64,000 nt of DNA, from positions 186,001 to 250,000 of IMG/VR virus record IMGVR_UViG_3300042922_000643; one strand, given 5' to 3'. The notes below the pieces were generated by a model. That model was not told the DNA's origin. It worked only from the letters and a program-made list of their open reading frames with translations, and made no database searches. The translations under genes and the position numbers were made by a program. Position 1 is the stretch's first letter, and every line of letters begins with the position of its first letter. This document shows, piece by piece, positions 11,800 through 58,236 of the stretch.

Positions 11800-12171
11800 A
11801 TGAAATGGCTGGAAGTGTATATGCAGGGGGAATTGCGGTATCAGGCACCGATTGTGGTCTTAACGAAGATTTATGATCGTGAAACGGGAGAGGGGTATAT
11901 TGCTTATCTCTCCGAGGAATCCTTTGAGGGATTGAAACATGCGGTTCGTAGTTGCGAATCGACTTGGAGTTTCACGTATAGTTCTGTGGCTGACTTTGAG
12001 ACCCTGGTCTATGCGGCGACAGATTCGGTGAATAAGCTGCTGAAAAGCGCAAGGCATGGCTGGTGTCACCTACAGAATGCCTCGGACAAGAGGTTCGGGG
12101 TATCTTATGTGGTCGTGGACATCAATAATAGCGTGGCGGTGTCGTACCTGAGCGATATGGAGGACGAATAG
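11800..12171 (+). CDS. small protein with C-terminal N-x6-L-x-D/E motif
   Basis: ends DINNSVAVSYLSDMEDE. Confidence 0.7.
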   Translation: MKWLEVYMQGELRYQAPIVVLTKIYDRETGEGYIAYLSEESFEGLKHAVRSCESTWSFTYSSVADFETLVYAATDSVNKLLKSARHGWCHLQNASDKRFGVSYVVVDINNSVAVSYLSDMEDE

Positions 12172-12172
12172 G

Positions 12173-12547
12173 ATGAGGTATCTAGTCAGTCTCTTAACAG
12201 GAGAGAAGTACCAGATTATCGCGATGGAGAAAGCGCTGGAGCGGGGCTATGTCTGGGTGGGTGTACTGGCGACGCGTGATCGAGTCGTCTCTGACTTTGG
12301 GCGGGAGCAGGCCTATGGTGTGGGCGAACTGAGTGAAGCTCGGTGCCTTTACCTGGATGAGGAATACACGCATGTCTCTTTTGAAGAGATGATGCATCAT
12401 GCAGGCAACAGGTTCTACTGGATACGGTTTTTGATGGATATTCCGACGCTGGAGATCCAAGGCAAGGGGGCTGACGCTGCGGTGATCATCGCCGAAGAGT
12501 CAGGGAATGAAGTTTGCCTACGGCTCCTACAGGAGGTGGAGGAATGA
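12173..12547 (+). CDS. small protein with C-terminal motif
   Basis: ends SGNEVCLRLLQEVEE. Confidence 0.7.
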   Translation: MRYLVSLLTGEKYQIIAMEKALERGYVWVGVLATRDRVVSDFGREQAYGVGELSEARCLYLDEEYTHVSFEEMMHHAGNRFYWIRFLMDIPTLEIQGKGADAAVIIAEESGNEVCLRLLQEVEE

Positions 12548-12939
12548 AGCGGATACGCTTTACACGGCTAGAGACTGTCGTCGATAAAGAAGTCGTGGTG
12601 ATCAGCCAGGAGGAGAATCATGAGGGTCACTATTGGGTGCTTCATGAGGTTACCCCTGAAGAGATCGAATTGGATGCAAAGAATGGATATCCAGGGATCT
12701 TTGGGACCACAGGAGCGCCATTACGAGGGGAGCAGGTACTGTATGCCCGTCCAGGGTTTGACCTGTTTTCGGATGAAACCATTGGTGACTTGACCATGGA
12801 TAGTTCCAAGTATCGGTGGGAGAAAGTTAAACATTTGAGTGGTGTGGGGATGACAACGCAATCGCCCACCGAGCTGATGTTTTACGAGGATGATAGTAAT
12901 CAAGGATTTGTATCGATCCTGGAAGATATAGAGGAGTGA
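12544..12939 (+). CDS. small protein with C-terminal motif
   Basis: ATG 12544 after GGAGG; ends DSNQGFVSILEDIEE. Confidence 0.7.
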   Translation: MKRIRFTRLETVVDKEVVVISQEENHEGHYWVLHEVTPEEIELDAKNGYPGIFGTTGAPLRGEQVLYARPGFDLFSDETIGDLTMDSSKYRWEKVKHLSGVGMTTQSPTELMFYEDDSNQGFVSILEDIEE

Positions 12940-12943
12940 GGCA

Positions 12944-13084
12944 TTGCGAGTCATCATGATTCTCCTCATGGTCGGGATTGCCTTCGGCGCACTTGGACCT
13001 GTATTCTGGTTTGTGGCGGCGCTGTGGCTGATCCTGGCCTGTATTCAGAAGTACCGTGACTGGGAGAGGAGGCACAAGCTGTGA
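12944..13084 (+). CDS. small membrane protein (not in ORF track)
   Basis: GAGGAG RBS, TTG start, 46 aa hydrophobic (ILLMVGIAFGALGPVFWFVAALWLILAC). Confidence 0.5.
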   Translation: MRVIMILLMVGIAFGALGPVFWFVAALWLILACIQKYRDWERRHKL

Positions 13085-13497
13085 AGTTTTTAAAGATTAA
13101 GCAGGGAGCAGAGCTGTTTGGGAATTCCCTGGTCCCTGTTCACGCCATCATTGATCTGGGTCCCAATAGTAATTCAGAAAGAGGGCGGGATCGGCGGCGA
13201 TACCTATGGCTGATTACCTTACCTGAGCCGCTGATGAGGATCAGGTCTTCTCTTTCGGGGTACAGTGGGAGAACTAGCCTGGCAAGAGAGCTAAGGCGAT
13301 GGTACGATTTCCACGACATGTCAGGAGGGAGCTTTACCCTCTCTTATGTGGAGGCGAAGGTCTATCAGGATGAGGGGAGTCATTACGGTAACGATTTGCT
13401 GTGGATTCGTCCGAATGAAGTCGCTTATGTGGATGAGCTTGACGAAGAGCAGCTGGATAATGATCGCCTTGTAACGTACCTAGAGGAGGCGGAGTGA
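13081..13497 (+). CDS. paralog family A protein with C-terminal motif
   Basis: VPVHAIIDLG...YLWLITLP...LRRWYDFH; ends LDNDRLVTYLEEAE. Confidence 0.75.
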   Translation: MKFLKIKQGAELFGNSLVPVHAIIDLGPNSNSERGRDRRRYLWLITLPEPLMRIRSSLSGYSGRTSLARELRRWYDFHDMSGGSFTLSYVEAKVYQDEGSHYGNDLLWIRPNEVAYVDELDEEQLDNDRLVTYLEEAE

Positions 13498-13913
13498 TGA
13501 GTAAGTATCTACTTCGGCTGAACGAGGGAGCCCAGGCAATGGGACGGAGTTTCCTTGAGGTACATGCGATCATTGCCCTTGACGTGGGTGAGGGACGGTA
13601 TATTTATCTGATCTCCTTGCCGAAGGATCTGTCTTCGATGAAAGATTCCTTTCGCGGCTATGCCCTTCATCCTTCCGCATTGAATTCGAACCGAGTGAAG
13701 GAGCTACGGCACTTATATACCTTTCATACCGTTAGCTGCGCAGGATTCGAGGTGACCTACGCGGCAGACAAAGTGTACCGAGAACATGGAAGCGAGATCA
13801 CAGGGCGAAGAGACCTGATCTGGATTAACCCGCGAAAGAATGCGTATGTGGACTTGATCGAGCCCGACGCGCTGAACAACGAAATCTATGTGCAGTTACT
13901 GGAGGAGGGATAA
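13494..13913 (+). CDS. paralog family A protein with C-terminal motif
   Basis: LEVHAIIALD...YIYLISLP...LRHLYTFH; ends LNNEIYVQLLEEG. Confidence 0.75.
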   Translation: MMSKYLLRLNEGAQAMGRSFLEVHAIIALDVGEGRYIYLISLPKDLSSMKDSFRGYALHPSALNSNRVKELRHLYTFHTVSCAGFEVTYAADKVYREHGSEITGRRDLIWINPRKNAYVDLIEPDALNNEIYVQLLEEG

Positions 13914-13915
13914 CG

Positions 13916-14308
13916 ATGGGGGATCGTAGACAGTTCATCCTGCTGGATAAAGGTCCTGACTTTGCCGTCGGCGTTCCGATTCGGGTCTACTGTATGATCG
14001 AGGTGTGGGATAAGATCCTCTACCTGGTGGAAGAAGCGGACGTTTACCGCGACCAGAAGGGGACATTCTGCAAGCATTATGCAACCAATTCGGGGAGAGG
14101 GTCAAGTCATCGCGCTCTATGGTACGAAGAAGAAGTCTACGCGCGAGAAGGTACATCCTTACGGCCTGGACTCATTTGGATCTCCATTCGTGCGCCAGGA
14201 CGATTATCCCCCGAGGAACTGGCGAATACGGGAACGATTGACATGGCCACCGCGGAAGACCTCACGAATGAACAGGTCCTAGCAACCTTGGAAGAGGTGG
14301 AGCCATGA
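13916..14308 (+). CDS. family A-like protein with C-terminal motif
   Basis: EEEVYAREG...LIWI; ends LTNEQVLATLEEVEP. Confidence 0.7.
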   Translation: MGDRRQFILLDKGPDFAVGVPIRVYCMIEVWDKILYLVEEADVYRDQKGTFCKHYATNSGRGSSHRALWYEEEVYAREGTSLRPGLIWISIRAPGRLSPEELANTGTIDMATAEDLTNEQVLATLEEVEP

Positions 14309-14691
14309 GGTGGGTGATGCTTCTGTGCGAGAAGAACAATCAGGTCGAGGGCGTTCTCTTTCCTGTGTTTCGTATTCTGGAATTCAGAGGAGGGACCCAT
14401 GCCTACTTAATCGGTATGCCTGATACCTACAAGAGTCAGAGGTCGTTCGATTATATGCGCAAACAGATTGAGGAGAGTCGCTTTATGATAGACACTACCT
14501 CTCAGGCTGCGTCGATGAAGACCACGTATGCCGCCAAACCCGAGTATGCGGCAGCAGGTCCTAGGGAGATTCCCAATACCTGCTGGGTGCATACCAGCCG
14601 CTCCGATGCCGAAAGCTTTGTGGATATCGAAGGTGTGCTAAACAACGAACAAGCGTTACAGTTCCTATATACAGAGGATATGCAGGAATAG
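14305..14691 (+). CDS. family A-like protein with C-terminal motif
   Basis: ends LNNEQALQFLYTEDMQE. Confidence 0.7.
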   Translation: MRWVMLLCEKNNQVEGVLFPVFRILEFRGGTHAYLIGMPDTYKSQRSFDYMRKQIEESRFMIDTTSQAASMKTTYAAKPEYAAAGPREIPNTCWVHTSRSDAESFVDIEGVLNNEQALQFLYTEDMQE

Positions 14692-14770
14692 AAATGGTTT
14701 GGGCCTATTATTGACCATATCATGTATATTGATTGCATAAACGATGCATAAAAGGAGGAAATCATGCATA

Positions 14771-15181
14771 ATGTATATTCAATGTACGGATCATACAGGG
14801 TATAGCTATACAGGGAAGGTATTGCACCAAGCCAAAGGGCAGCAGGGAATGTACTACAAGGTGGAACGTACCCCTGATCTTCAAGCCTTTATCGAGGAAC
14901 GGAACTATATCGTCATGACTTCCTTGTCCCAGACCTGCCCCACTCAGTACCGCGACCCTGATTACACGAGTCAAAAGTGGAACGATCAGGATCGCCCTTG
15001 GCTTCGACAGCTCAAGATGGAGGAAATCGGCATCACCATAACCATTCTCCCAGGCCTCAACAACGAGGATATGCTCCTCATGCTCCCCGATCAGGACGAC
15101 GATCAAGGGATGCAACCTGGCCGTAAATACCCAAATACTGGGGGTCTAGGTACTAAAGGTAAGAGAGGTTGGGGTTGGTAG
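14771..15181 (+). CDS. small protein with near-C-terminal motif
   Basis: GLNNEDMLLMLPDQDDD followed by a ~20 aa tail. Confidence 0.6.
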   Translation: MYIQCTDHTGYSYTGKVLHQAKGQQGMYYKVERTPDLQAFIEERNYIVMTSLSQTCPTQYRDPDYTSQKWNDQDRPWLRQLKMEEIGITITILPGLNNEDMLLMLPDQDDDQGMQPGRKYPNTGGLGTKGKRGWGW

Positions 15182-19518: not shown

Positions 19519-19767
19519 GTGAAAACTGAGAAAGGAATGATCATTAAGATTGGCCCTCACCCTACCATTAATCCAAGTGCTCTAGGTTTAGTATACGTTA
19601 TTACAGAACCTAAAAGTTGGGGCAGCCTGGATACAGGGAAAGTTATTTCAAACCCAAATGGATGGTTAAGTGAAGAAGTAAGGCATGCGTTTGATCCTAA
19701 CTATGATGTTCTTTTGCCTGAAAATAATGAATATTACGCTAAATTTTTTCTAAAGGATGATTCGTAG
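19519..19767 (+). CDS. paralog family C protein with C-terminal motif variant
   Basis: KGMIIKIG..P....ALGLVY...RHAFDPNYD; ends ENNEYYAKFFLKDDS. Confidence 0.7.
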   Translation: MKTEKGMIIKIGPHPTINPSALGLVYVITEPKSWGSLDTGKVISNPNGWLSEEVRHAFDPNYDVLLPENNEYYAKFFLKDDS

Positions 19768-19789
19768 TTTCGGAAACCCATGAAAAATA

Positions 19790-20224
19790 ATGAATATGGA
19801 GAGGTTGATGAAAATGAGCACTATTACGGTCAAGGATACGGATAGCGTACGTTTGTCTATCATTGTAAACCAAAAACACATTCTTCTTCAGCAGATGGAG
19901 AAAGAAGAAGAGGATGCTGATTATCTACATAGTTCTATCGATGTGCATGATACTAATCTAGATCATCTGATTGCCGCGCTTTCTGCGATTTCAAATGCTA
20001 AGAAACTGGGCATCGAGATTACGAACCTAATTAATTACCATGGCTATATTTGTCAGGGATTAAGCGAGTTCGGTCAGATCGTTGTTCTTGCTTATGCCCA
20101 GCCCTATATGAAGATGGGTGATTTGGCAAAGTATGAATTGTCTACGGCTTATAGCTATAAGGTGGGGCAAATACTCGACGTGGATTTTGAATACTGGCAT
20201 CTGATTAACGAATTCGCCAAATAA
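19790..20224 (+). CDS. paralog family B protein
   Basis: TNLDHLIAALSAISNAKKLGIEI. Confidence 0.7.
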   Translation: MNMERLMKMSTITVKDTDSVRLSIIVNQKHILLQQMEKEEEDADYLHSSIDVHDTNLDHLIAALSAISNAKKLGIEITNLINYHGYICQGLSEFGQIVVLAYAQPYMKMGDLAKYELSTAYSYKVGQILDVDFEYWHLINEFAK

Positions 20225-20345
20225 TAAAAGAGGGTGAGTTTAAAAATGACACCTTTTCAAGTCTTAGGGGTATTCGCAATAGCGGGTACACTGGGTGGTC
20301 TTGCTGGAATCATTATTCGGCGTTATCAGAAATAGGAGGTGCAGT

Positions 20346-20585
20346 ATGGACACGCCGCTTAAATTAACGATCTATCCGTTTTATGCTGCACCTAAATATA
20401 TTCAAGATCTGAGTCGGAATGGTGGAGATGAGGATCATGTTTACATTATATACCAAGATGACGATAAGATATTTGGAGATCTGGTAGAAGACATTGTCGA
20501 TAAGATGGCGAAATGTGACTATCATCGGTATGAAGAGCTTTACCAAGGTCGTCCTTGTTATATATATATTACAAATCATGGGTAA
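20346..20585 (+). CDS. hypothetical protein
   Basis: GGAGG RBS, ATG 20346. Confidence 0.6.
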   Translation: MDTPLKLTIYPFYAAPKYIQDLSRNGGDEDHVYIIYQDDDKIFGDLVEDIVDKMAKCDYHRYEELYQGRPCYIYITNHG

Positions 20586-20597
20586 GGAGGCAAGATA

Positions 20598-21077
20598 ATG
20601 TCTGATTTCTCAGCTCTTACGGGATTTGAAAAGCTGATTGTTAATGCTATGCGTGTAGATTATTCCATTACAACGAAAGAAGCTGAACGTATCGTTCGTA
20701 AATACCTTCTGGTTATTCGAGATATTAACGATACTCAAGATACGCCACTCCTTCAAGCCGCTCGTTATTATGATGCACATAAGTTGAACACTGATCCTTT
20801 AATATGGCTTGAGCGTAATATAAAGATGAGAAAAGCGACCATTCCTGCGTATATTAATACACCTATGACGATTCCGTCGCTGTATAAGGTGTTTGTACTT
20901 GAAATTTCTGTTTATAACTTCAACGAAGTAGCTTATCAATATGAAAAAGAGTTTGAGGAAGAACCTACAGCGTCTGAAATTGTCTTGGCTTGCCAGTATA
21001 TCCGTAATAAATATGGCCCCTATAGGGTATCCGCCACCGTTTTTACACGCTATAACTACAGCGAACAACAAATCTAG
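20598..21077 (+). CDS. hypothetical protein
   Basis: AAGGAGG RBS, 159 aa. Confidence 0.65.
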   Translation: MSDFSALTGFEKLIVNAMRVDYSITTKEAERIVRKYLLVIRDINDTQDTPLLQAARYYDAHKLNTDPLIWLERNIKMRKATIPAYINTPMTIPSLYKVFVLEISVYNFNEVAYQYEKEFEEEPTASEIVLACQYIRNKYGPYRVSATVFTRYNYSEQQI

Positions 21078-21085
21078 GGAGCCTG

Positions 21086-21116
21086 CCGCCATCCAATCGG
21101 GTGAGCGGTTTTTTCT
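21086..21116 (+). terminator. terminator hairpin
   Basis: CCGCCATCCAATCGGGTGAGCGG followed by T-tract. Confidence 0.65.
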
Positions 21117-21150
21117 ATGTAGACTCATCAAAACCAAGGAGGTGCTAGTT

Positions 21151-21426
21151 ATGTCAATTGAAATAGGTAGCATTGTCCGTCTAGGTGAAAATCCTTCTGT
21201 GTATGAAACAGCATGGGGTCTAATTTTTGTCATTGAAAATTTTAAAGAAGAAGATACTGTTATTCAAGTTCATGGTCACATTTTAAAATCTCCTGGCGGT
21301 TGGTGGGGGTATATGAATGAGATCAGTCACGAATTTAATCCAGAGTATGATACTATAATGAAGGCTGATAACATCCAGCTGCTATCTCTCCTAGAGGAGG
21401 AGGATGAGTATGGAGATAAAGATTAA
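21151..21426 (+). CDS. paralog family C protein with C-terminal motif
   Basis: AWGLIF...HEFNPEYD; ADNIQLLSLLEEEDE. Confidence 0.7.
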   Translation: MSIEIGSIVRLGENPSVYETAWGLIFVIENFKEEDTVIQVHGHILKSPGGWWGYMNEISHEFNPEYDTIMKADNIQLLSLLEEEDEYGDKD

Positions 21427-44106: not shown

Positions 44107-44122
44107 GAAAGGTTGATGTGTC

Positions 44123-44299
44123 TTGGGCGAGAAGGAACTTCGGCAAGCTGCTAGAGGGATGTATAAAACCGCTGAACAGATGAAGATGCTCAGACTTGCC
44201 CAAGAAGGCACATTGGCTCAGTATCTTCTCAAGAAAGAGTTCAGCAAGATGCAACGCAAGATGAATGCCAAGGTCCGCAAGGCTCTTGGTATCAAGTAG
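44123..44299 (+). CDS. small basic protein (not in ORF track)
   Basis: AAAGG RBS, TTG start, ...MYKTAEQMKMLRLAQEG...KVRKALGIK. Confidence 0.5.
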   Translation: MGEKELRQAARGMYKTAEQMKMLRLAQEGTLAQYLLKKEFSKMQRKMNAKVRKALGIK

Positions 44300-45404: not shown

Positions 45405-45418
45405 GGAGGTGTTAGGTC

Positions 45419-48413: not shown

Positions 48414-49789
48414 TGACAAAGAAAGAAAAAGCATTGGCAGCAGCAGCGGCAGCTGAAGCAACAACTGGAACAGCAACTACGGAGGTAACGGCTCCTGTTC
48501 AAACAAGAGAAGAAGCAATGGCAGCGTTTCGTGCTCAACTTGCTGGTGAAATTTGCCAGTATGTACCATTCTCCGTTGGCTTAACTCTTGATGATGTATC
48601 GAATATGCCTACAAACGTTGTTATCGCAAAAAATGGTCTGTTTCGTGTATCCAAGACACCTATCGGTTATTTTGCAACTCAGCTGGCCGTAGGAGACGCT
48701 AAATTCGTTATTCCTGGTGTTCAGGAAATCAAGAAGGGTGTTACGCTTTCTATTCCAAAAATTCCTTTCGAGTACTGGCTGGAAGTTCTGTCATTTTATC
48801 GTGATGTATATAACAAGGATAAAACAGAAGCATCATTATTGTTCTTCTGGAATGACCGCGAAATTACATTGCCTACTGAATTCACTGATGGTACTCCGAT
48901 TAAAGGTCTTTCGGAACGCGGCCAGCTAATCATGTATTGTCCGTCCCAGAAGAATAGTAGCGGTCTTTCAAACTTCACAGCAGATACTATGGTTCCATGG
49001 CTGCGGACGAACACAACGCCGTTACTCGAAACCCATTCTCACCATACAATGGGCGCTTTCTGGTCGTCAACGGATAATGACAATGAGAATATGAATCAGT
49101 TCTATGGCGTCTACGGTGAAATTTTGAAACCTGATCCAAAATTCCTTTTCCGTTATGTGCATGGAACAGACAAGTCGGATATTGACTTCTATGAACTGTT
49201 TGAAAAACCTGTCACTATTACTCAGGTTATCATCGGCGATAAAGTAATTGATATTCAAAATGCCGTAGAATACAAAGGTCCATGGCCAAATCTTGAATAT
49301 CCTGCTGACTGGATGGAGAAACACGCTGTTAGTTACACAGTGACTCCCAGTTATGGCGGCGCAGCGGGTGGATATGGACGTGGCGGCCAGGGCGGTGGAT
49401 ACGGTCAAAATAATGGATATGGTTATGGCGGCGGCGCAAGCGGGTACGGACGCGGTGGTCTTGGCTATGATGATGACTATGTTGCAAGCCAATATCGTGC
49501 AGGAGCTGGAGGAACCGCAGGTGCTGCGGGACAAGCCAAGCTGCTTGAATTCGATGAGAGCAAAAAAAACACCGTGGACGGGGAGGACGTGGCCGATCTG
49601 ACCGACGGAGTGGTCAAAAAGGTTATCGAAACAAAAACAAGCACCGTTGAGATCGTGGCCTTGCAAAGATTGTCCCCCTTTTCCGAAAAGCAGATTTTTT
49701 CGCTTTGTGAGGAATTGTCAGAGATGGGCTACGACCAAGTTATTCACGGGACGATCCAAGCGATGATTGGAATGACGGAGGAGGCGTAA
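48413..49789 (+). CDS. JAB/MPN metalloprotease (PRTRC protein A type) with Gly/Tyr-rich tail
   Basis: E (KTEAS) plus ETHSHHTMGAFWSSTD = HxH-x7-S-x2-D JAMM motif. Confidence 0.85.
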   Translation: MTKKEKALAAAAAAEATTGTATTEVTAPVQTREEAMAAFRAQLAGEICQYVPFSVGLTLDDVSNMPTNVVIAKNGLFRVSKTPIGYFATQLAVGDAKFVIPGVQEIKKGVTLSIPKIPFEYWLEVLSFYRDVYNKDKTEASLLFFWNDREITLPTEFTDGTPIKGLSERGQLIMYCPSQKNSSGLSNFTADTMVPWLRTNTTPLLETHSHHTMGAFWSSTDNDNENMNQFYGVYGEILKPDPKFLFRYVHGTDKSDIDFYELFEKPVTITQVIIGDKVIDIQNAVEYKGPWPNLEYPADWMEKHAVSYTVTPSYGGAAGGYGRGGQGGGYGQNNGYGYGGGASGYGRGGLGYDDDYVASQYRAGAGGTAGAAGQAKLLEFDESKKNTVDGEDVADLTDGVVKKVIETKTSTVEIVALQRLSPFSEKQIFSLCEELSEMGYDQVIHGTIQAMIGMTEEA

Positions 49790-49835: not shown

Positions 49836-50798
49836 ATGGATTTTGAATTGAAAAATAACTTCGTATTGGATGTAAAAGCAAATGAACCAAAACATTTTGT
49901 ACTGATCGGTTGCGGCGGTAATGGCGCATATTTCATTCGGGACTTCATTCGTCAAGTTGCTATTCAAAACATGCAAATGTCTATGTCTTTGGATAAACGT
50001 TCGCACTGCGTTACTGTTATCGATGCCGACGAAGTTGAAGACAAGAATTTGACTCGTCAAAACTTCGTACAGAAGGACGTCGGATCTAATAAATCACAGA
50101 TTCTTGCAAATCGTTACGGTTCAGCTTTCGGCGTACCGATTCGGTATGTGCCCGAATATATTCAGAACGAAGAGCATCTTTTGTCTATCATTCAGGGACA
50201 ACCAGGAACGCCTGTCATCCTCGGAGCTGTCGATAACAATAAGACCCGTAAGATCATCTATGATACCTATAAGAAGCTCAGCGGAGCCTTCTGGATCGAT
50301 GCTGGTAACGAGCAATATGCAGGCCAGGTTGTTTGTGGGTATAACTACCCTAGCGCACCTGACACAAGCAAAGCTCGGGAACCTCATCAGTTCTATATGC
50401 CTTGTGCAATTGATATTTATCCTGAAATCGCTGAAGCAACAGATAAACTTCCTGGTGAATTGTCCTGCGCAGAACGTTCAGTATCTGCACCGCAGAACAT
50501 TTTCACAAATATCACAGCTGCAACAATCATGATGGGATTTGCGAATATCATTCTCACCGCATCGAATGTTGCTGAAGGCGAAGGACTTCGCTGTCATGCT
50601 GTAACTTTCAATACTCATAATACCATCGCTCAGACTACTCGATTGAATCATGAAGATTTATTAGCTGCACGCTATGTAGCTCCTCCTGTAGCTGAAGCAC
50701 CAGAAGCTCCAGTCCCTACACCAGCGGTGAAGAAACCTGCATCCAAGAAAAAGAAAGCTCCTGCATCCGCTGCTCCTGTTCCTGCACCAACAGCATAA
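49836..50798 (+). CDS. E1-like ThiF-family adenylyltransferase (PRTRC ThiF type)
   Basis: LIGCGGNG, IDADEVEDKNLTRQNF, KS..LA.RY, VDNNKTR, DAGNE, ELSCAE (candidate catalytic Cys). Confidence 0.9.
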   Translation: MDFELKNNFVLDVKANEPKHFVLIGCGGNGAYFIRDFIRQVAIQNMQMSMSLDKRSHCVTVIDADEVEDKNLTRQNFVQKDVGSNKSQILANRYGSAFGVPIRYVPEYIQNEEHLLSIIQGQPGTPVILGAVDNNKTRKIIYDTYKKLSGAFWIDAGNEQYAGQVVCGYNYPSAPDTSKAREPHQFYMPCAIDIYPEIAEATDKLPGELSCAERSVSAPQNIFTNITAATIMMGFANIILTASNVAEGEGLRCHAVTFNTHNTIAQTTRLNHEDLLAARYVAPPVAEAPEAPVPTPAVKKPASKKKKAPASAAPVPAPTA

Positions 50799-50861
50799 CT
50801 GAATAAAAAAATGAAGGGGGAGGCGACTCTCCCTTGTACATATTATATTGAAGGAGGCGCT

Positions 50862-51278
50862 ATGATGCTTGAATTTGGTAACCGTCGGCGAATAGTCCGA
50901 CTTGAAAATAAAGTAATCGAACTGTTGAAAGAAAACAAAGAGCTTCAAAAAAGTTTAAAGGAAAAAAGAAAGTTCTACGATCCTCAATGGGGAAAAGAAA
51001 TCACCGTCTCTCCTTATGTATTTGAAAGGTATATCAAACATATAGGCCGACCCACTCTTGGAGGATACCTGGTATATTGTGAAGATGGTACTTCTTATAC
51101 GGTAAATATCGACGAAGAAATGAGTGACGGATATATCCGTTTTGAACAAGCTTTTGAAGAACCACACGGGGAATGTAAATATTGTTCTAAATTTTTTAAA
51201 CTTTTTGATGGGTACCCGAAAGATAGTCCTGATTTTTGTAGCCATGACTGCTATAATCGTTTCTTAAAGGAGACTTAA
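50862..51278 (+). CDS. hypothetical protein with treble-clef Zn finger
   Basis: CKYC...FCSHDC. Confidence 0.65.
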   Translation: MMLEFGNRRRIVRLENKVIELLKENKELQKSLKEKRKFYDPQWGKEITVSPYVFERYIKHIGRPTLGGYLVYCEDGTSYTVNIDEEMSDGYIRFEQAFEEPHGECKYCSKFFKLFDGYPKDSPDFCSHDCYNRFLKET

Positions 51279-51279: not shown

Positions 51280-51585
51280 ATGAAAGTCCTACTTCCTAAT
51301 GGAAATTGGCCTTATAGTTTTAGACCTCAATTACCGTGTGCTGTCTTGATGACTATTCAATATGAACAGAAAATTTATCATCTTATTCATAGATCAAATT
51401 ATAATCCTATTTCCTATTCGGGTCTTTTACCTAGAGCCCAATTGCTTTACATTGATCCTAATCATACCCACTTACTTACTCTAATCAATTTTTCAGATTT
51501 TATGTGGACTGAAGAATCAGAGATTGATCTGTTCGAAGAATTTAATAATGAGTATCTATCCCACAAATTACTTACCGATTTCTAG
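51280..51585 (+). CDS. small protein with C-terminal motif variant
   Basis: ends FNNEYLSHKLLTDF. Confidence 0.6.
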   Translation: MKVLLPNGNWPYSFRPQLPCAVLMTIQYEQKIYHLIHRSNYNPISYSGLLPRAQLLYIDPNHTHLLTLINFSDFMWTEESEIDLFEEFNNEYLSHKLLTDF

Positions 51586-51919
51586 GACCAAGAAAGGAAT
51601 CAGTTTCTGGCTCTTTTCTTGGTCCTAGAAAAAGATGTTTCCACCTTTTACGACTCTGACATTGCGGAAACAAGAGTTCGTTCACGCGAAGGCTGAACTT
51701 ATTCTACTTTTTTTCTTCAACGACAAAATCCCACCTCTCCCCTTTCTATGACTAAACTAGAAAGTGATTACAATGTAACGGCCCGTCCAAAAGGCGTCAG
51801 TGGTTTTGTAGGATGCTATCCACGAGGGATAGCGGGATCGAGAGAGCACCAGGAAGTTTCGTGGGGACCTGGGTAAAAGTGAAGCATCTTTCTAGAACCA
51901 ACCAAATGAGGTGATCGTT

Positions 51920-52234
51920 ATGAGTATGGAAGGTATTCTTAAATTCTATCCAGAAGGTTCTATTATCTGGAAAGGAAAACACGATACAAGAGATAATTAC
52001 TGTTTTATTAAAGTAGTAAATCGTGAAAGTGGTTGCTCAATCCCTAAAGAATGTTATGAATATTTACACAAAATAGGATTAGGTGAGTTTACTCATGAAG
52101 GTAGAAGTTGGCCCTATACGTTGAGTAAAGGCTGGTCTACTATGGTAGATAGTCTCGACGGTATAGAAGTGGTTCCGCCTTTTCATATAAATAATGATAC
52201 TCTTATCCATATGCTTTTGGACGAGGAGGATTAA
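51920..52234 (+). CDS. paralog family G protein with C-terminal motif
   Basis: FYPEGSIIWKG...CSIPKECYEYL; ends INNDTLIHMLLDEED. Confidence 0.75.
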   Translation: MSMEGILKFYPEGSIIWKGKHDTRDNYCFIKVVNRESGCSIPKECYEYLHKIGLGEFTHEGRSWPYTLSKGWSTMVDSLDGIEVVPPFHINNDTLIHMLLDEED

Positions 52235-52237
52235 TCT

Positions 52238-52579
52238 ATGCGTCCTAATGATTATATTACAAAATATGTTCCTGACGGAGCAATTGTCTGGGCAGGTTTG
52301 GACCCAAGTTCTTCATACGAAACATATTGCAAGATTTATGTTTACACCTGGAGGGCTTTTGATGAGTGTTATATCCCAGATGAATGTGCCAAATATTTAA
52401 AGCGTATGGGACTGCAAGATTATATTTACCGTGACCCACATTCTAATGGTTATTTAAAAGGCGAATATCGTTTAATGGGTGGATATTATACTTCTTGTGA
52501 TAGAATGACATATGAAACTGTTTATTCTTTTAACAATTCAACTGCTATTACTTTTTTACCAGATTTGGAGGAGCACTAA
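52238..52579 (+). CDS. paralog family G protein with C-terminal motif
   Basis: YVPDGAIVWAG...CYIPDECAKYL; ends FNNSTAITFLPDLEEH. Confidence 0.75.
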   Translation: MRPNDYITKYVPDGAIVWAGLDPSSSYETYCKIYVYTWRAFDECYIPDECAKYLKRMGLQDYIYRDPHSNGYLKGEYRLMGGYYTSCDRMTYETVYSFNNSTAITFLPDLEEH

Positions 52580-52881
52580 TGAATAGTATAGCTGACTTCT
52601 TTCCAGTTAAAAGTGTACTTTGGTCGGGGTTGTCACCGATAGTTAATAGTACCTGTCATATCGAAGTTTGTAGTGACCCTTCCCACCACTGCTATATACC
52701 TCCAGAATGTGCTAAATTTTTAATAAGCATGGGGTATAAAGAATGCATAGTGGAAGATTATTACTCCTGGGAATACGCTTTAAGAGGAGGATTCCATGTA
52801 GGTGGCTTAAAAGAACCAACAGTCACTTTTAAACAAATCTCCAATTCTACTTTTGCAGAATTTTTGAAAGATACTGAATGA
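52579..52881 (+). CDS. paralog family G protein with C-terminal motif
   Basis: FFPVKSVLWSG...CYIPPECAKFL; ends ISNSTFAEFLKDTE. Confidence 0.75.
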   Translation: MNSIADFFPVKSVLWSGLSPIVNSTCHIEVCSDPSHHCYIPPECAKFLISMGYKECIVEDYYSWEYALRGGFHVGGLKEPTVTFKQISNSTFAEFLKDTE

Positions 52882-54370: not shown

Positions 54371-54494
54371 CATACTCCTTTGGATATTTCCTTTCGGAAA
54401 TTCGGAAAAGTCTCTGCTTCCTGCTTTATTTTAATATTCTCTAGGGGGACACATGGTGTGTCCTCTTTTCCATTTCTATAAGGCGGTGATATTT

Positions 54495-54890
54495 ATGAAT
54501 TACCTTGATCCACGAGAAGGAAAAGAAATCACAGGTAGTACGGGGGAAATCCGCGTCAGACTCGTTGGTGGATCATTTCATGAATCTGCCTTTGCTACTG
54601 TTAAAGAGGGGGACGAAGTTACCCTTCAAAAAGAACCCAAAAATAAATATGACAGATATGCTATTGTAGTGCTCTCTGAAAATAACCGTGTTTTGGGTTA
54701 TATTGCCAATAGAGTAGAAACTATTGGGAGAAACAAAGCAACAAATTCCGCAGCGGATGTATATAGACATATCAACGATAGAACATCAGCTATCATAATT
54801 GATAAGAGTCCAAGCTCTGCCGTACTTTTGATTAATGCTTCGAATGAAGTTTTTTTAAATAGATTAAAGGAGGAGAAGTTCGATGATTAA
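54495..54890 (+). CDS. HIRAN domain protein with C-terminal motif
   Basis: VKEGDEVTLQKEPKNKYDRYAIVVL....LGYI; ends ASNEVFLNRLKEEKFDD. Confidence 0.85.
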   Translation: MNYLDPREGKEITGSTGEIRVRLVGGSFHESAFATVKEGDEVTLQKEPKNKYDRYAIVVLSENNRVLGYIANRVETIGRNKATNSAADVYRHINDRTSAIIIDKSPSSAVLLINASNEVFLNRLKEEKFDD

Positions 54891-55176
54891 TTCTAGATCA
54901 TCTTCTTTAGTAGAATTAATAGAGATGTCTCTCTTAGCTAATCACGAAATTCTAGTTCTTTTATCTCGTAACTCTGGTTTTAGTTCACAAGCTGGAGAAA
55001 AAGAAGTAGGTCGTATTTTAAAATCTATTGGTTATATGAACGAACCTTGGTTTAAAGTTGAATGGAGCATCAGAAGAACTACCAACAATTATCCATTAGA
55101 GGATCTTATCATTATTTCTTCAACGGACTTTAATAATGAAAATCTTTCTAAGATTTATCTTAGAGATATGGATTAG
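54883..55176 (+). CDS. paralog family H protein with C-terminal motif variant
   Basis: VGRI...WFKVEW...NNYPLEDL; ends FNNENLSKIYLRDMD. Confidence 0.7.
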   Translation: MINSRSSSLVELIEMSLLANHEILVLLSRNSGFSSQAGEKEVGRILKSIGYMNEPWFKVEWSIRRTTNNYPLEDLIIISSTDFNNENLSKIYLRDMD

Positions 55177-55190
55177 GAGGTTCGTTCTAT

Positions 55191-55472
55191 ATGATTACAG
55201 AAGAAATTATTTTAAGCCATATTCGTCATGGAAAAGTGATAGAAGTTTTGCTATCTCGATATTCTGAATACGCTGAACAAGCAAAAGAAGATGAAATCGG
55301 AAAAATTACTGGCAAACTGGATGATGATGGTGATCTTGAAGGTATATGGTTTCAAGTCGAATGGGATTCAGGCGATGTGAATTATTATCATTTATCAGAT
55401 CTGATTTTCATTAATTTTTCTACGGATAATTACAGTATGCTTTCTCTTCTCCAAGATATCGACGACGTATAA
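55191..55472 (+). CDS. paralog family H protein with C-terminal motif
   Basis: IGKI...WFQVEW...NYYHLSDL; ends TDNYSMLSLLQDIDDV. Confidence 0.7.
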   Translation: MITEEIILSHIRHGKVIEVLLSRYSEYAEQAKEDEIGKITGKLDDDGDLEGIWFQVEWDSGDVNYYHLSDLIFINFSTDNYSMLSLLQDIDDV

Positions 55473-55610
55473 AGTAAAGTCACAATAGGATTTATACGCT
55501 TCGATATAGTCAAGACCCGTAGTCTATTACTGGGTTGAAGCCACGTAACCTTCCATCGGAAACGTGGCTGTCTATAAATCTGCCGAAGATCCTATTGTGA
55601 CTTTACTTTA
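55470..55610 (+). ncRNA. RNA cassette E
   Basis: perfect 22-bp stem 55470-55491/55589-55610 plus U-G; TATACG 55493-55498; CCGAA 55583-55587. Confidence 0.8.
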
Positions 55611-55629
55611 TAATAAGGTGGGAACATTT

Positions 55630-57789
55630 ATGAGAACGTTAGTCCTTACTCGTGGTATAATGGCTTCTTCAAAATCAACATGGATTGCTGAAAATGGTCT
55701 TGCACCTTTTACTTTATCTAGTGATAACTTGCGTCTACTCCATTCTGCTCCACAGCTTCAAGAAGATGGCAAGCAGGTAATAGCGGGATCGCAAGAAGGT
55801 AAGATCTGGAAACTTTTATTTGAAGTTTTGGAGCGACGTATGCAAAACGGCGATTTTACCGTCATTGATGCAACACATATTACTTCGAGTTCCATTTCTG
55901 AGTATCGTGAACTGGCTAATAAATATCGTTATCGCGTGTTTGTAGTGGATTTTACTAATGTTCCTTTGGAAATAGCTTTAGAGCGGAATAAAAATCGTGA
56001 AGAATATAAGTATGTTCCAGAACATAAGATTGAAATAGCTTATGCTAAGCTTTCAGAAAATCATGTGCCTTCTTATGCGAAAGTTATTAAACCAGAAGAA
56101 TTCTGGGATCATGTTTCATATACAAAAATTGATTACAGCTCTTATCGCAAAATTCATCATATCGGGGATGTTCATGGATGCTACAGTGCATTAATGACTT
56201 ACCTTTCAGGCGAAATGAAGGAAGACGAGTTGTATATTTTTGTTGGTGATTATCTAGACCGCGGCATTCAGAACCGCGAAGTTTTAGAATTCCTCATTCA
56301 GATTAAAGACCTTCCAAATGTTATTCTTCTTGAAGGTAATCATGAAACTCATCTTCGCAAATGGTCAATGGATGAAACCGTTAAAAGTTTAGCATTCAAC
56401 CACTATACCGAAAAAGAGATTCATGATGTTAATAAGTCCGCTGTTCGTGAACTGTGCAGAAAGTTCAGACAGGTTTGTTATTATGAATATTACGGCAAAA
56501 CAGTGCTCGTCACTCATGGAGGCTTATCCTGCATTCCAAACGAACTTGCTTTGATCTCGACTTCTCAATTTATTAAAGGAGTAGGAAATTATGAAGTTGA
56601 TATTGATGCTATTTTCTCGGCTTCTGAACAAGATGGAACGTACCAGGTCCATGGTCATCGCAACATCTTCAGACTGCCTATGCAAGCCGCTGAGCGTTCT
56701 TTTAACCTGGAGGGTAGAGTTGAATCAGGAGGAGACTTAAGGGCTCTTACACTAACTCCTGAGGGGTTTCAAGAGCATTGTATCCAGAATCATGTTTTTA
56801 CAACAGAACATTCTCCAATGCCTCCCGTTGTAGGTTCCAAAACAACTACAGACAATTTCATTGAATACCTTCAGTCACACAAAATGGTTAAAGAAACACA
56901 GATAACTGATCATATTTCATCTTTTAACTTTACACGTAAAGCATTCAATAATGGCGTTTGGGATACGCTTAACATCAAGGCTCGCGGCCTTTTTGTGAAT
57001 AAGCATACTCGAAAGATCGTTAGCCGATCTTATGATAAGTTTTTTAATATTGACGAAGTTCCAGCTACAAAGATGGGAACATTAGCCAATACCCTGGAAT
57101 TTCCTGTGATTTTGTCAGAAAAACCGAATGGATACCTAGGTATTATCGGGTATGATGAGGAGACAGATGAACTGATCTACTCTTCCAAGTCTGAAACTCG
57201 TGGTACTTATGCGGTATCATTCAGAAAACTTTTCGAAGAAAAAGTTCCTGTTGAAATACGTGCTTGGCTTAAAGGATATCTTTACGGAAATGACGTGTCG
57301 ATAACTTTTGAGGTTATTCTTCCACAAGAAGATCCACACATCATAGAATATAAAGAGAATACTTTGATCTTACTCGATATTATCCAGCGAAATGTTCAGT
57401 TCCAAAAGAGATCTTATTCCGAGGTTGTTGAGCTCGCAATGAATCTTCTTCTTCCATATCGTAAAATCAAATATGTCTTCCATAACTGGTTAAGTTTCTA
57501 TCACTGGTATCAAAACGCATCTCAAGATTATTCTGTTAAAGAAGAAGGGTATGTCCTTGAAGATAATTCAGGTTTTATGACAAAGATAAAATTACCGTAC
57601 TATCTTTTCTGGAAGCAAATGCGTACAGCAAAATTCCAGGTGAAGATGGAGGGCTATATGCTTCCTCAGTGGTTGCCGCCAATTCCTGACGATCTTAAAA
57701 ATTTCGTTGGGTGGGCTAAACAGCAAGATCAGGAGTATTTGAAACGCGTGGATGTTATCCAGTTGCGTACAGATTACGAGGGCTCTTAA
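55630..57789 (+). CDS. polynucleotide 5'-kinase / metallophosphoesterase / RNA ligase fusion (Pnkp-like RNA repair enzyme)
   Basis: P-loop-like RGIMASSKST and DATH; phosphoesterase GDVHG, GDYLDRG, GNHE, THGG, HGH; ligase KARGLF, EKPNG, EEGYV, KIK; start taken at ATG 55630. Confidence 0.88.
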   Translation: MRTLVLTRGIMASSKSTWIAENGLAPFTLSSDNLRLLHSAPQLQEDGKQVIAGSQEGKIWKLLFEVLERRMQNGDFTVIDATHITSSSISEYRELANKYRYRVFVVDFTNVPLEIALERNKNREEYKYVPEHKIEIAYAKLSENHVPSYAKVIKPEEFWDHVSYTKIDYSSYRKIHHIGDVHGCYSALMTYLSGEMKEDELYIFVGDYLDRGIQNREVLEFLIQIKDLPNVILLEGNHETHLRKWSMDETVKSLAFNHYTEKEIHDVNKSAVRELCRKFRQVCYYEYYGKTVLVTHGGLSCIPNELALISTSQFIKGVGNYEVDIDAIFSASEQDGTYQVHGHRNIFRLPMQAAERSFNLEGRVESGGDLRALTLTPEGFQEHCIQNHVFTTEHSPMPPVVGSKTTTDNFIEYLQSHKMVKETQITDHISSFNFTRKAFNNGVWDTLNIKARGLFVNKHTRKIVSRSYDKFFNIDEVPATKMGTLANTLEFPVILSEKPNGYLGIIGYDEETDELIYSSKSETRGTYAVSFRKLFEEKVPVEIRAWLKGYLYGNDVSITFEVILPQEDPHIIEYKENTLILLDIIQRNVQFQKRSYSEVVELAMNLLLPYRKIKYVFHNWLSFYHWYQNASQDYSVKEEGYVLEDNSGFMTKIKLPYYLFWKQMRTAKFQVKMEGYMLPQWLPPIPDDLKNFVGWAKQQDQEYLKRVDVIQLRTDYEGS

Positions 57790-57816
57790 GAGCCCTTTCT
57801 CTTAGGAGGTGAGACC

Positions 57817-58236
57817 ATGTCATATCATTACTATACAACCTCAACAACTTCGACAACTTATAGTGGTTATTACAATACAAGTCAAAGAAAGAAAGCTGCT
57901 AAAAAACACAGACCCTTATCAGAAGAGTCAGAATTACTATCCATCATGATATCCGACAAATTAAAAAGGAATAAGGAAGTATTCATAAGCCTTAAAATGG
58001 ATACCCGTATTTTAAGGGATTTGAATAGGGTCTCTGGGGGTACGATAAATCAGACAACTGTTTTAAAAGTACTCGGTGTTTACGTGAGTTCCTTTGGAAA
58101 TCATAGCGTTATTACTCAGCATCCTGACATTTTAGCAGGAAGAGATATTAAAATATCTTTTTGTGATTTGGAACCAAAATTTGTAAATGAATTCGATACG
58201 GAAGATATGTTAATCATACTTCCTGATTTTGAATGA
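57817..58236 (+). CDS. small protein with C-terminal motif variant
   Basis: ends FDTEDMLIILPDFE. Confidence 0.65.
   Translation: MSYHYYTTSTTSTTYSGYYNTSQRKKAAKKHRPLSEESELLSIMISDKLKRNKEVFISLKMDTRILRDLNRVSGGTINQTTVLKVLGVYVSSFGNHSVITQHPDILAGRDIKISFCDLEPKFVNEFDTEDMLIILPDFE

What the first reader, a model, noticed from the sequence alone, without database searches (positions are those of the whole stretch)
11800..58236. Hypothesis: box proteins act as substrate adaptors for the phage ubiquitin-like or Clp machinery
Established: eukaryotic F-box/SOCS-box proteins and poxviral PRANC proteins pair variable substrate-binding domains with a short conserved box that docks on one ligase. Seen: this window has E1, E2, JAB and Ubl but no recognisable E3, plus dozens of variable-domain-plus-box proteins, five of them just downstream of the E1 gene or close by (51280-52881 and 54495 onward). 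Inference only: the box could supply E3-like specificity against many host defence proteins.
Basis: inference. Interest (0 to 1): 0.65.

Follow-up and report, generated by a model that had tools for sequence, protein, structure and literature searches.

The report
Phage gene family sharing one tail helix
A 251-kb Bacillus-type jumbo phage carries about 30 fast-evolving small early genes that all end in the same short helix, next to a complete ubiquitin-like conjugation operon, but nothing yet shows that the two work together.

Summary
The window has 29 small + strand genes (about 34 in the 251,543-bp phage genome). Each ends in one motif, an Asn-capped amphipathic helix plus a short, mostly acidic tail. 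Reversed-proteome controls give no hits.

The N-terminal parts differ: SH3-like barrel, HIRAN, P-loop, and in a relative a Ubl-like domain. The box is therefore a portable module.

The neighbouring operon is a genuine ubiquitin-like system. It has a poly-Ubl precursor, a Prok-E2_D-like E2, a JAB peptidase with an intact motif, and a ThiF-type E1. The genome has no ClpP.

The proposed link between box and operon is unproven.
- For it: the box family occurs only in the phage clade that has the operon. A box gene sits just after E1 in most relatives. The family co-occurs (11 of 11 against 0 of 2) with a coiled-coil gene at the head of the operon.
- Against it: two relatives keep the whole core operon with no box genes. 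All co-occurrence reduces to one or two evolutionary events. No box resembles a known E3, E2-binding or F-box element.

The complex prediction gave no answer.

Best reading: a hypervariable adaptor-like family with a shared docking helix whose partner is still unknown.

The parts
11752..15181 (+). Box-gene array A: eight tandem paralogs of 124-145 aa (11752-12171, 12173-12547, 12514-12939, 13081-13497, 13494-13913, 13916-14308, 14305-14691, 14744-15181). The last one carries the box internally, followed by a 27-aa extension. The stretch is locally GC-rich (0.51).
   Evidence: alignment A9: W110, N129 and L136 invariant; GC; AF2 model of low confidence (pLDDT 58.6)
19519..21676 (+). Box genes 19519-19767, 20941-21426 and 21404-21676. 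They share an 'HxFxPxYD' stretch before the box.
   Evidence: the N-domain of 19519-19767 matches a G002 box protein that carries the G002-type box
27188..27466 (+). Single box gene, starting 57 nt after the AAA ATPase gene.
33320..35046 (+). Box-gene array D: 33320-33682, 33689-34036, 34050-34382, 34499-34756, 34789-35046. All are SH3-like plus box.
38232..40185 (+). Box-gene array E: 38232-38501, 38511-38753, 38765-39025, 39871-40185. Gene 38511-38753 was folded as an SH3-like barrel plus a C-terminal helix at residues 69-75.
   Evidence: pLDDT 79.3; KOW/Tudor/L21e/NdhS/YorP-like, TM about 0.6-0.74; ortholog in WH1 carries the WH1-type box
51280..52881 (+). Box genes just downstream of E1: 51280-51585 (start 1 nt after the end of the Zn-finger gene), then 51911-52234, 52238-52579 and 52579-52881.
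54453..55472 (+). Box genes 54453-54890 (HIRAN domain plus box), 54883-55176 and 55191-55472.
   Evidence: HIRAN PF08797 at 2.5e-10; HIRAN-plus-box homologs at the same relative position in L101 and L102
57817..58236 (+). Last box gene of the window (139 aa).
40983..44299 (+). Upstream extension of the Ubl locus: 275-aa protein (40983-41810), 135-aa hydrophobic protein (41814-42221), 559-aa coiled-coil protein with a Gly/Ala/Pro-rich tail (42427-44106) and a 58-aa basic protein (44123-44299). The 559-aa gene has the same phyletic pattern as the box family.
   Evidence: p559 present in 11 of 11 box-bearing sources, absent in KLEB27-3 and G005; no Pfam, PDB or Atlas assignment
44474..44839 (+). 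Poly-Ubl precursor: two 58-residue repeats each ending AGTKG, plus the cap LILA.
   Evidence: repeat structure; 2-6 repeats in relatives; weak Prok_Ub PF14454; alignment A8
44961..47047 (+). 147-aa protein ending in a conserved D-F-I-COOH (44961-45404) and a 542-aa conserved protein of unknown fold (45419-47047). The 542-aa protein is a candidate for the 'novel alpha-helical protein' of operon type 6d.
   Evidence: Iyer et al. 2006, Table 1 row 6d (PMC1779556)
47060..47839 (+). E2-like protein (Prok-E2_D type), invariant Cys160.
48413..49789 (+). JAB/JAMM peptidase with an N-terminal extra domain and a Gly/Tyr-rich linker. Active-site motif at residues 208-221. The preceding gene 47985-48413 (142 aa) has no homolog in the seven other genomes searched.
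49836..50798 (+). E1-like ThiF adenylyltransferase (PRTRC type). The GxGGxG motif and Cys211 are invariant in 40 homologs.
50811..51278 (+). 155-aa protein with a C-terminal CxxC...CxxxC cluster, between E1 and the first downstream box gene. Its only homolog among the genomes compared is in phage Edson.
   Evidence: (phrog_29812, phrog_34503; function unknown)
26013..27131 (+). Classical AAA ATPase (phrog_2376) with the same phyletic pattern as the box family. It is considered as an alternative docking partner.

Best explanation
The box is a portable C-terminal module. It is an Asn-capped amphipathic helix of about 9-10 residues followed by a short tail that differs between phage lineages. It is attached to many unrelated or very divergent small binding domains: SH3-like barrels, HIRAN, a P-loop domain, and Ubl-like domains in a relative.

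The about 30 proteins are early-region products that diversify much faster than their neighbours.

The most economical mechanism is an adaptor family. The N-terminal domain binds a target, and the common helix tethers every member to one shared partner.

The partner is not identified. The box consensus changes as a block between phage lineages (acidic, Lys-x-Glu, Lys-Glu-Trp, or basic tails). I therefore infer a fast-evolving partner, probably encoded by the phage. The proteins of the extended Ubl locus are the leading but unproven candidates.

Shown: the family, its modularity, its fast divergence, and its phyletic pattern. Inferred: that the helix docks on a partner, that all members share one partner, and what that partner is.
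For: - The motif is real and strictly C-terminal. The constraint is at protein level, because the invariant Leu uses six codons.
- The N-domains differ. HIRAN is found in 54453-54890. An SH3-like barrel is modelled for 38511-38753. A P-loop is seen in genome 51220-51897. Two WH1 members have an N-domain like the Ubl repeat. One helix packing identically on four folds is unlikely.
- Each genome's box HMM finds almost only that genome's own members: own 24-25, WH1 37-38, G002 9-10, with a single cross-hit in all. Orthologous N-domains nevertheless carry the box of their own genome. The box therefore co-varies within a genome.
- Divergence is fast. Box proteins of WH1 have a median 50% identity to their best match in Edson, against 79.5% for non-box genes matched for size and region (Mann-Whitney p = 5e-8).
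- Loss is all-or-none. KLEB27-3 is sister to G002 with bootstrap 100 and has no member at all. This is what one expects if all members depend on one shared component.
- The helix has lower model confidence (about 64) than the barrel (78-88).
Against: - No binding partner was found. The only complex job scored 0.00 and counts as no answer.
- Between WH1 and Edson orthologs the box is no better conserved in residue identity than the N-domain (0.44 against 0.49). Only four or five positions are constrained.
- Part of the acidic tail is a side effect of embedding the next gene's Shine-Dalgarno sequence. Non-box genes with a gap of 15 nt or less also have about twice as many acidic residues in their last six positions (1.48 against 0.76). 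Box genes are higher still (2.91 and 1.91).
- Many members may share one SH3-like ancestor (alignment A5). Some of the apparent variability of the N-domains is then divergence rather than domain shuffling.
Confidence: 0.5

Rival explanations
1. The box docks on the phage Ubl machinery (E2, E1, Ubl or another protein of the locus), so each box protein acts as an E3-like substrate receptor that directs Ubl conjugation to a different host protein.
For: - The box family is seen only in the clade that has the operon. Both relatives without E1 (0305phi8-36 and MTATph1) lack it.
- A box gene lies zero to two genes after E1 in every box-bearing source. The order is E1-box-NT5C in L101, L102, L104, L105 and L107. 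In Edson it is E1-box. In the phage studied here it is E1-Zn155-box with starts 13 nt and 1 nt after the preceding gene ends.
- The 559-aa gene at the head of the locus co-occurs with the family, 11 of 11 against 0 of 2.
- Two WH1 box proteins have Ubl-repeat-like N-domains. One box protein here has HIRAN, a domain known from my own knowledge in the Rad5/HLTF ubiquitin ligases.
- No E3 is recognisable, and E2-binding single helices exist in eukaryotic E3s (own knowledge).
Against: - KLEB27-3 and G005 retain poly-Ubl, p542, E2, JAB and E1 without any box gene.
- All co-occurrence maps to one gain and one loss on the tree.
- The whole region keeps its gene order in these relatives and about 30% of early genes are box genes, so adjacency is weak evidence.
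- E1-adjacent box proteins from different lineages are not detectably orthologous.
- No Pfam similarity to F-box, SOCS-box or PRANC.
- The complex job gave no answer and is not counted either way.
Confidence: 0.2
2. The box addresses a host component. Either it mimics the tail of a host hub protein, or it is a degron that hands these early proteins or their cargo to a host protease or unfoldase. Box proteins with a C-terminal docking peptide would resemble SspB-type adaptors of ClpX.
For: - The architecture of a small beta-barrel plus a C-terminal peptide, with hydrophobic and acidic residues at the very end, parallels the SspB XB tail, the SSB C-terminal tail and HbYX motifs (own knowledge).
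- The distance from the Asn cap to the carboxyl end is most often 12 residues in this genome and in G002.
- The genes lie in the early, host-takeover-like block together with Apyc1, a sigma factor and a J-domain protein.
- The phage has no ClpP of its own, so any proteolytic route would have to use the host's.
Against: - Host hubs are conserved across Bacillus, yet the tail switches between acidic, Lys/Glu, aromatic-terminal, basic (L106) and long forms among related phages.
- In L101 and L102 the box is followed by 8-20 more residues, so a free carboxyl end is not required.
- The complete loss in KLEB27-3 is not explained by this reading.
Confidence: 0.15
3. The box has no docking role. It is simply the best-conserved structural element (a terminal capping helix) of one old, rapidly diverging paralog family. 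Its acidic end largely reflects ribosome-binding sites for the next gene.
For: - Fourteen members align over their full length with a shared pattern of PxGxxV, GxW(F/Y), DLIP and box.
- Tandem neighbours are clear paralogs.
- The acidic tail is partly explained by Shine-Dalgarno embedding.
- The box is not more conserved than the rest between orthologs.
Against: - The same helix is attached to HIRAN, P-loop, Ubl-like and SH3-like domains.
- The consensus shifts in concert per genome even on orthologous N-domains.
- Box genes are more acidic than controls even when the gap to the next gene is long.
- The helix has lower confidence than the barrel in the model.
Confidence: 0.15
4. The shared partner is the phage AAA ATPase (26013-27131), possibly together with the vWA-TerF-like protein (genome 24426-25199). 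Box proteins would be its substrate adaptors.
For: - Both genes have exactly the phyletic pattern of the box family among eight complete genomes: present in this phage, WH1, Edson and G002; absent in KLEB27-3, G005, 0305phi8-36 and MTATph1.
- A box gene starts 57 nt after the ATPase gene.
- AAA+ adaptors with short docking motifs are a known principle (own knowledge).
- vWA MIDAS sites bind acidic ligands (own knowledge).
Against: - The ATPase family (phrog_2376) is found in 376 phage records, mostly Herelleviridae, Enterococcus and Escherichia phages.
- The 40-kb early region of TsarBomba around its ATPase has no box genes.
- About 5 of roughly 125 shared genes show the same pattern, so the match is not specific.
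Confidence: 0.05

Closest known systems
F-box / SOCS-box / poxviral PRANC substrate-receptor families
   Same: Large, fast-evolving families in which diverse binding domains share one short conserved element at an end of the protein. The families expand in tandem arrays and turn over quickly between close relatives.
   Different: There is no sequence or Pfam similarity. The box here is a single helix of about 10 residues plus a tail, not a 40-50-residue three-helix module. No Skp1, Elongin or cullin-like scaffold is recognisable, and binding to any ligase component is not shown.
Prokaryotic Ubl operon type '6d' of Iyer, Burroughs and Aravind 2006 (PRTRC-type: Prok_Ub, Prok-E2_D, Prok-JAB, ThiF)
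   Same: The gene set is the same: Ubl, a large conserved protein, an E2-like protein with a conserved Cys, a JAB with an extra N-terminal domain, and E1. The paper lists B. cereus and B. thuringiensis among carriers, and notes tandem Ubl repeats in related systems (PMC1779556).
   Different: This one sits in a lytic-type jumbo phage. The Ubl is a 2-6-repeat head-to-tail precursor with a C-terminal cap. NCBIfam scores for PRTRC_A and PRTRC_ThiF are below the curated cut-offs. No ParB was looked for. The locus has an upstream coiled-coil extension and is flanked by box genes.
SspB-type adaptors of AAA+ unfoldases
   Same: A small beta-barrel substrate-binding domain followed by a short docking peptide at the extreme C-terminus.
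   Different: This is an analogy only. There is no homology, no phage ClpP, and no demonstrated unfoldase partner.
SH3-like small barrels of phage and prophage proteins (for example B. subtilis SPbeta YorP, PDB 2heq)
   Same: The fold of the modelled member (TM about 0.6).
   Different: YorP was compared by fold only, and its sequence was not checked for the box. Its function is also unknown.

Membership tests
F-box / SOCS-box / PRANC adaptor families | Variable target-binding domain joined to one short conserved box | tested here: met
   HIRAN, SH3-like, P-loop and Ubl-like N-domains all carry the same C-terminal motif
F-box / SOCS-box / PRANC adaptor families | Sequence homology of the box to PF00646, PF07525 or PF09372 | tested here: not met
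   No such Pfam hit in 20 box proteins scanned at E up to 0.05-0.1. The box is too short (about 12-16 aa) to be such a module.
F-box / SOCS-box / PRANC adaptor families | The box binds a ligase adaptor or scaffold | tested here: inconclusive
   Complex prediction of E1 + E2 + Ubl + an 80-aa box protein scored 0.00, which is no answer. No Skp1, Elongin or cullin-like protein was recognised among the locus proteins scanned.
Prokaryotic Ubl conjugation operon (Iyer 2006 type 6d / PRTRC-like) | E1-like ThiF with nucleotide-binding glycines and a conserved Cys | tested here: met
   PF00899 at 1.2e-12; PRTRC_ThiF at 1.8e-31 (109 bits, below the 144.75 cut-off). G25, G27, G28, G30 and C211 are invariant in 40 homologs.
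Prokaryotic Ubl conjugation operon (Iyer 2006 type 6d / PRTRC-like) | E2-like (UBC-fold) protein with a conserved Cys | tested here: met
   Atlas places it with Prok-E2_D clusters (0.96, TM 0.62-0.72). Four homologs carry PF14460. C160 is invariant in 15 sequences. There was no direct Pfam hit on the window protein.
Prokaryotic Ubl conjugation operon (Iyer 2006 type 6d / PRTRC-like) | JAB/JAMM metallopeptidase motif | tested here: met
   HSHHTMGAFWSSTD (HxHx7Sx2D) is conserved in five genomes. Prok-JAB 0.002, PRTRC_A 5e-7.
Prokaryotic Ubl conjugation operon (Iyer 2006 type 6d / PRTRC-like) | Ubl with a C-terminal Gly exposed by processing | tested here: met
   Head-to-tail repeats each end in AGTKG and are followed by a cap peptide. 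Prok_Ub hits are weak or faint. The beta-grasp fold itself was not modelled.
Prokaryotic Ubl conjugation operon (Iyer 2006 type 6d / PRTRC-like) | ParB-family partner (the 'PR' of PRTRC) | not tested
   No ParB was searched for in the genome.
HIRAN domain proteins | Match to PF08797 above the gathering score | tested here: met
   54453-54890: 40.5 bits against a cut-off of 24.7, E 2.5e-10.
SH3-like small beta-barrel fold | Five-stranded barrel topology matching solved SH3, KOW or Tudor domains | tested here: met
   AF2 model pLDDT 79.3 with strands 10-13, 30-36, 41-46, 56-60 and 64-66. Foldseek TM is 0.55-0.64 to L21e, NdhS, NusG-KOW, Tudor and YorP, but E-values are only about 1e-2.

The most novel reading that the evidence does not exclude
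A jumbo phage runs its own ubiquitin-like conjugation system, with a polyubiquitin-style precursor, E1, E2 and a JAB protease. It equips that system with a rapidly evolving repertoire of about 30 interchangeable substrate receptors that plug in through one C-terminal helix. This would be a viral, prokaryotic-world counterpart of the SCF/F-box or PRANC receptor network, aimed at host (defence) proteins.
Probability: 0.15. Interest if true: 0.9.

Novelty: new variant of a known kind. Interest (0 to 1): 0.6.

Why it matters
Phage-encoded Ubl conjugation has no known function. Bacterial Ubl systems (Bil, Bub, CBASS Cap2) are currently understood as host defences (own knowledge).

This phage clade offers a compact, complete system (poly-Ubl, E1, E2, JAB) next to a hypervariable family with a common handle. 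If the two are linked, this would be the first substrate-receptor logic for a prokaryotic or viral Ubl system, and a rich source of proteins that bind host defences.

Even if they are not linked, the box family is a clean example of a portable docking tag that evolves in concert within each phage genome. It also gives a direct experimental route to the tag's partner: pull down with and without the box.

Tried and rejected
- Complex prediction of E1 + E2 + Ubl monomer with the 80-aa box protein as partner scored 0.00, 'no answer'. It is not evidence either way.
- Pfam and PHROG scans of box proteins gave nothing except HIRAN in one.
- The word-based homolog search of one member found only itself.
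- The exhaustive profile search with A5 over 1.84 billion representatives found 15 hits. All are from this phage or a near-identical strain, plus two genes on one 2.7-kb contig. A wide co-occurrence statistic was therefore impossible.
- Megablast of 20 kb against phages gave no match.
- E1 as a single query in IMG/VR found nothing. The alignment query found 7 loci.
- The idea that the box derives from the first strand of the Ubl repeat was rejected. One WH1 alignment suggested it, but the three lineage consensus sequences do not match their own Ubl repeats.
- Orthology of the E1-adjacent box genes across lineages is not supported.
- Promoter and terminator scans of 40000-56000 gave counts no higher than shuffles.
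- The Atlas search for the 275-aa protein gave no usable hit.
- PDB sequence searches for p559 and p542 were empty.
- The AF2 model of array-A member 13494-13913 was too poor (pLDDT 58.6) to classify.
- Literature searches for WH1, KLEB27-3 and phage-encoded Ubl systems in jumbo phages found nothing specific.
- ClpP is absent from the genome.

Full report
WHAT THE WINDOW IS

The window is bases 186001-250000 of a 251,543-bp IMG/VR virus record with 42% GC. Almost all genes in it are on the + strand.

The major capsid protein is about 70% identical to those of Bacillus jumbo phages Edson, vB_BceM_WH1 and vB_BauM_KLEB27-3. It is 47% identical to that of Moorella phage MTATph1 and 37% to that of Bacillus phage 0305phi8-36.

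I built a maximum-likelihood tree from 16 core proteins (5,472 columns). It gives ((this phage,((WH1,Edson),(G002,KLEB27-3))),G005),(0305phi8-36,MTATph1), with bootstrap 100 at every node. G002 and G005 are complete IMG/VR contigs found through the E1 protein.

THE BOX

The last roughly 16 residues of many small ORFs share one pattern. Counted from an invariant Asn, it reads N-[EDSQ]-x-phi-phi-x-x-L-x-[DE]-x-[DE], and the protein most often ends exactly 12 residues after the Asn.

- An HMM of this stretch finds about 32 ORFs at 9 bits or more in the six-frame translation of the genome. All matches are at the ORF end. The reversed control peaks at 7.9 bits.
- An independent search with alignment A2 gives 30 matches.
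- Iterated models give no hit in reversed proteomes and none away from a C-terminus.
- I count 29 members in the window, between 11752 and 58236. About five more lie at genome positions 23-3077 and 16715-17333, and one lies on the minus strand at 51220-51897.
- The invariant Leu is written with six different codons, so the constraint acts on the protein.
- Part of the acidic tail has a mundane cause. Small non-box genes followed within 15 nt by another gene also end acidic (1.48 against 0.76 acidic residues in the last six), because the next gene's Shine-Dalgarno sequence lies in their last codons. Box genes exceed this in both gap classes (2.91 and 1.91).

ARE THE N-TERMINAL PARTS VARIABLE?

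By BLAST only tandem neighbours resemble each other. Fourteen members from five arrays nevertheless align over their full length.

An AlphaFold model of 38511-38753 (pLDDT 79.3) is a five-stranded SH3-like barrel followed by the box helix. The helix is the least confident part of the model. Foldseek places the barrel with L21e, KOW, Tudor, NdhS and the SPbeta protein YorP (TM about 0.6), and with unnamed small phage proteins.

Other members are clearly different:
- 54453-54890 has a HIRAN domain (2.5e-10).
- The 225-aa minus-strand member has a P-loop.
- Two WH1 members have an N-domain homologous to the Ubl repeat (1e-7).
- The eight-gene array at 11752-15181 could not be classified.

The box is therefore a portable module. 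Even so, much of the variability is extreme divergence of one barrel rather than shuffling of unrelated domains.

BEHAVIOUR ACROSS RELATIVES

I fetched eight complete genomes and scanned them.

| Genome | Box genes | E1 present |
|---|---|---|
| This phage | about 25-34 | yes |
| WH1 | 38 | yes |
| Edson | at least 19 | yes |
| G002 | 10-13 | yes |
| KLEB27-3 | 0 | yes |
| G005 | 0 | yes |
| 0305phi8-36 | 0 | no |
| MTATph1 | 0 | no |

- Each lineage has its own version of the box. WH1 and Edson have N-E-x-x-phi-x-x-phi-K-x-E followed by a few residues. G002 has N-K-E-A-x-x-L-L-x-K-E-W. Further relatives have basic tails (L106) or long tails (L101, L102).
- Each genome's HMM finds essentially only that genome's members. 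N-domains that are detectably orthologous between genomes nevertheless carry the box type of their own genome. This concerted, genome-specific change is what a motif tuned to a co-evolving partner would show. A founder effect in each expansion is the alternative explanation.
- Between the close pair WH1 and Edson, box proteins have a median 50% identity to their best match. Size- and region-matched non-box genes have 79.5%, and larger proteins 92% (p = 5e-8).
- A profile search of 1.84 billion representative proteins found the family only in this phage or a near-identical strain, and on one 2.7-kb contig.

THE UBL OPERON

- 49836-50798 is a ThiF-type E1.
- 48413-49789 is a JAB peptidase with an intact HxHx7Sx2D motif.
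- 47060-47839 is E2-like. The ESM Atlas puts it with Prok-E2_D clusters, four homologs carry PF14460, and Cys160 is invariant.
- 44474-44839 encodes two head-to-tail 58-residue repeats, each ending AGTKG, then four cap residues. Relatives have 2, 4, 5 or 6 repeats. This layout resembles a polyubiquitin precursor.
- The set, together with a conserved 542-aa protein and a small protein ending D-F-I, matches operon type 6d of Iyer et al. 2006. That paper lists B. cereus and B. thuringiensis among the carriers (PMC1779556).
- No E3-type family was reported by the scans. A 155-aa Cys-cluster protein follows E1.
- The genome has no ClpP.

IS THE BOX FAMILY TIED TO THE OPERON?

In favour:
- The family is known only inside the operon-bearing clade.
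- In seven further relatives reached through E2 and E1 homologs, box genes again lie near the operon. The local order is E1-box-NT5C in five of them.
- In this phage the order is E1, the Zn-cluster gene and a box gene, whose starts lie 13 nt and 1 nt after the preceding gene ends.
- The coiled-coil 559-aa gene that opens the locus is present in all 11 box-bearing sources and absent from the two operon-bearing genomes without box genes.

Against:
- KLEB27-3 and G005 keep poly-Ubl, p542, E2, JAB and E1 with no box gene. KLEB27-3 is nested within the box-bearing clade. The operon therefore functions without the family, and the family was lost as a whole.
- Every co-occurrence reduces to one gain and one loss.
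- Gene order in the region is conserved throughout these relatives, and about a third of early genes are box genes.
- The E1-adjacent box proteins of different lineages are not detectably orthologous.
- An AAA ATPase (26013-27131) and a vWA-TerF-like protein (genome 24426-25199) share the same phyletic pattern. The ATPase family is common in phages that have no box genes.
- The one complex prediction allowed gave no answer.

VERDICT

The adaptor-like architecture is supported. The Clp variant is not supported.

The specific claim that the box supplies E3-like specificity to the Ubl system remains an untested inference. I put it at about 0.2.

My best reading, at about 0.5, is a hypervariable early-gene family whose common C-terminal helix docks all members on one shared, fast-evolving partner. 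That partner is probably phage-encoded and is not yet identified.

Noticed in passing
window 44474-44839; L017:915-1994; L025:5264-5644: The Ubl gene is a polyubiquitin-style precursor. It consists of 2 to 6 nearly identical head-to-tail repeats of 56-61 residues, each ending AG(T/V)KG, followed by a short cap peptide that varies between phages. The repeat number differs between related phages.
   Followed up: yes
window 40188-40964: Strong match to the anti-Pycsar nuclease Apyc1 (PF23023, 1.6e-62). This known anti-defence gene sits among the box arrays.
   Followed up: no
window 15334-15735, 16246-16668, 18219-18671: A possible second C-terminal motif family. Three ORFs end in a similar '(V/K)-(E/V)-V-F/I-P-P-(Q-P)-K' stretch that is unrelated to the box.
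   Followed up: no
window 55564-57789: A single 741-aa protein fuses a polynucleotide-kinase-like P-loop (AAA_33), a calcineurin-like phosphoesterase and a T4-type RNA ligase 1 domain. This is a complete RNA (tRNA) repair enzyme. In KLEB27-3 the RNA ligase and the kinase are separate genes.
   Followed up: partly
window 59735-62374 and 62815-63750: DNA polymerase III alpha is split into two ORFs (PHP/core/finger, then HHH_6) with a 440-nt gap. Relative L107 has one 1,125-aa gene, and WH1 has three pieces. This suggests an intervening element (intron or homing element).
   Followed up: no
window 26013-27131, 31472-32101, 32282-32950: An AAA ATPase (phrog_2376), a J-domain protein and a sigma-70-like factor lie among the box arrays. 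In the Herelleviridae phage TsarBomba an ATPase, a metal-dependent hydrolase and a DnaJ-like gene lie close together, which hints at a shared early-gene module.
   Followed up: partly
window 12001-14000: The eight-gene box array A is markedly GC-richer (0.51) than the rest of the window (0.37-0.47). It also has a strong GC skew (0.22).
   Followed up: no
window 50811-51278: A 155-aa protein with a C-terminal CxxC...CxxxC cluster lies directly after E1. It is found otherwise only in Edson. Iyer et al. 2006 proposed Zn-finger proteins of related operons as possible target recognisers.
   Followed up: partly
window 28470-29018 and 18687-19256: A Nudt16-like NUDIX (RNA-decapping-type) hydrolase (7e-21), and a protein with an RNase H1 N-terminal dsRNA/hybrid-binding domain (2.7e-20). 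The latter has a short paralog at 17626-17853 with a similar C-terminal end.
   Followed up: no
genome 24426-25199 (L063:4426-5199); L004:14926-16256; L101 and L102 upstream of the operon: A vWA-TerF-like protein (1.3e-56) is present in this phage. In relatives, TerD and TerC genes sit next to the Ubl locus, giving a tellurite-resistance-like module in these jumbo phages.
   Followed up: partly
L103:10775-16737: In one relative the JAB and E1 genes are interrupted by three LAGLIDADG-type ORFs, probably inteins or homing endonucleases.
   Followed up: no
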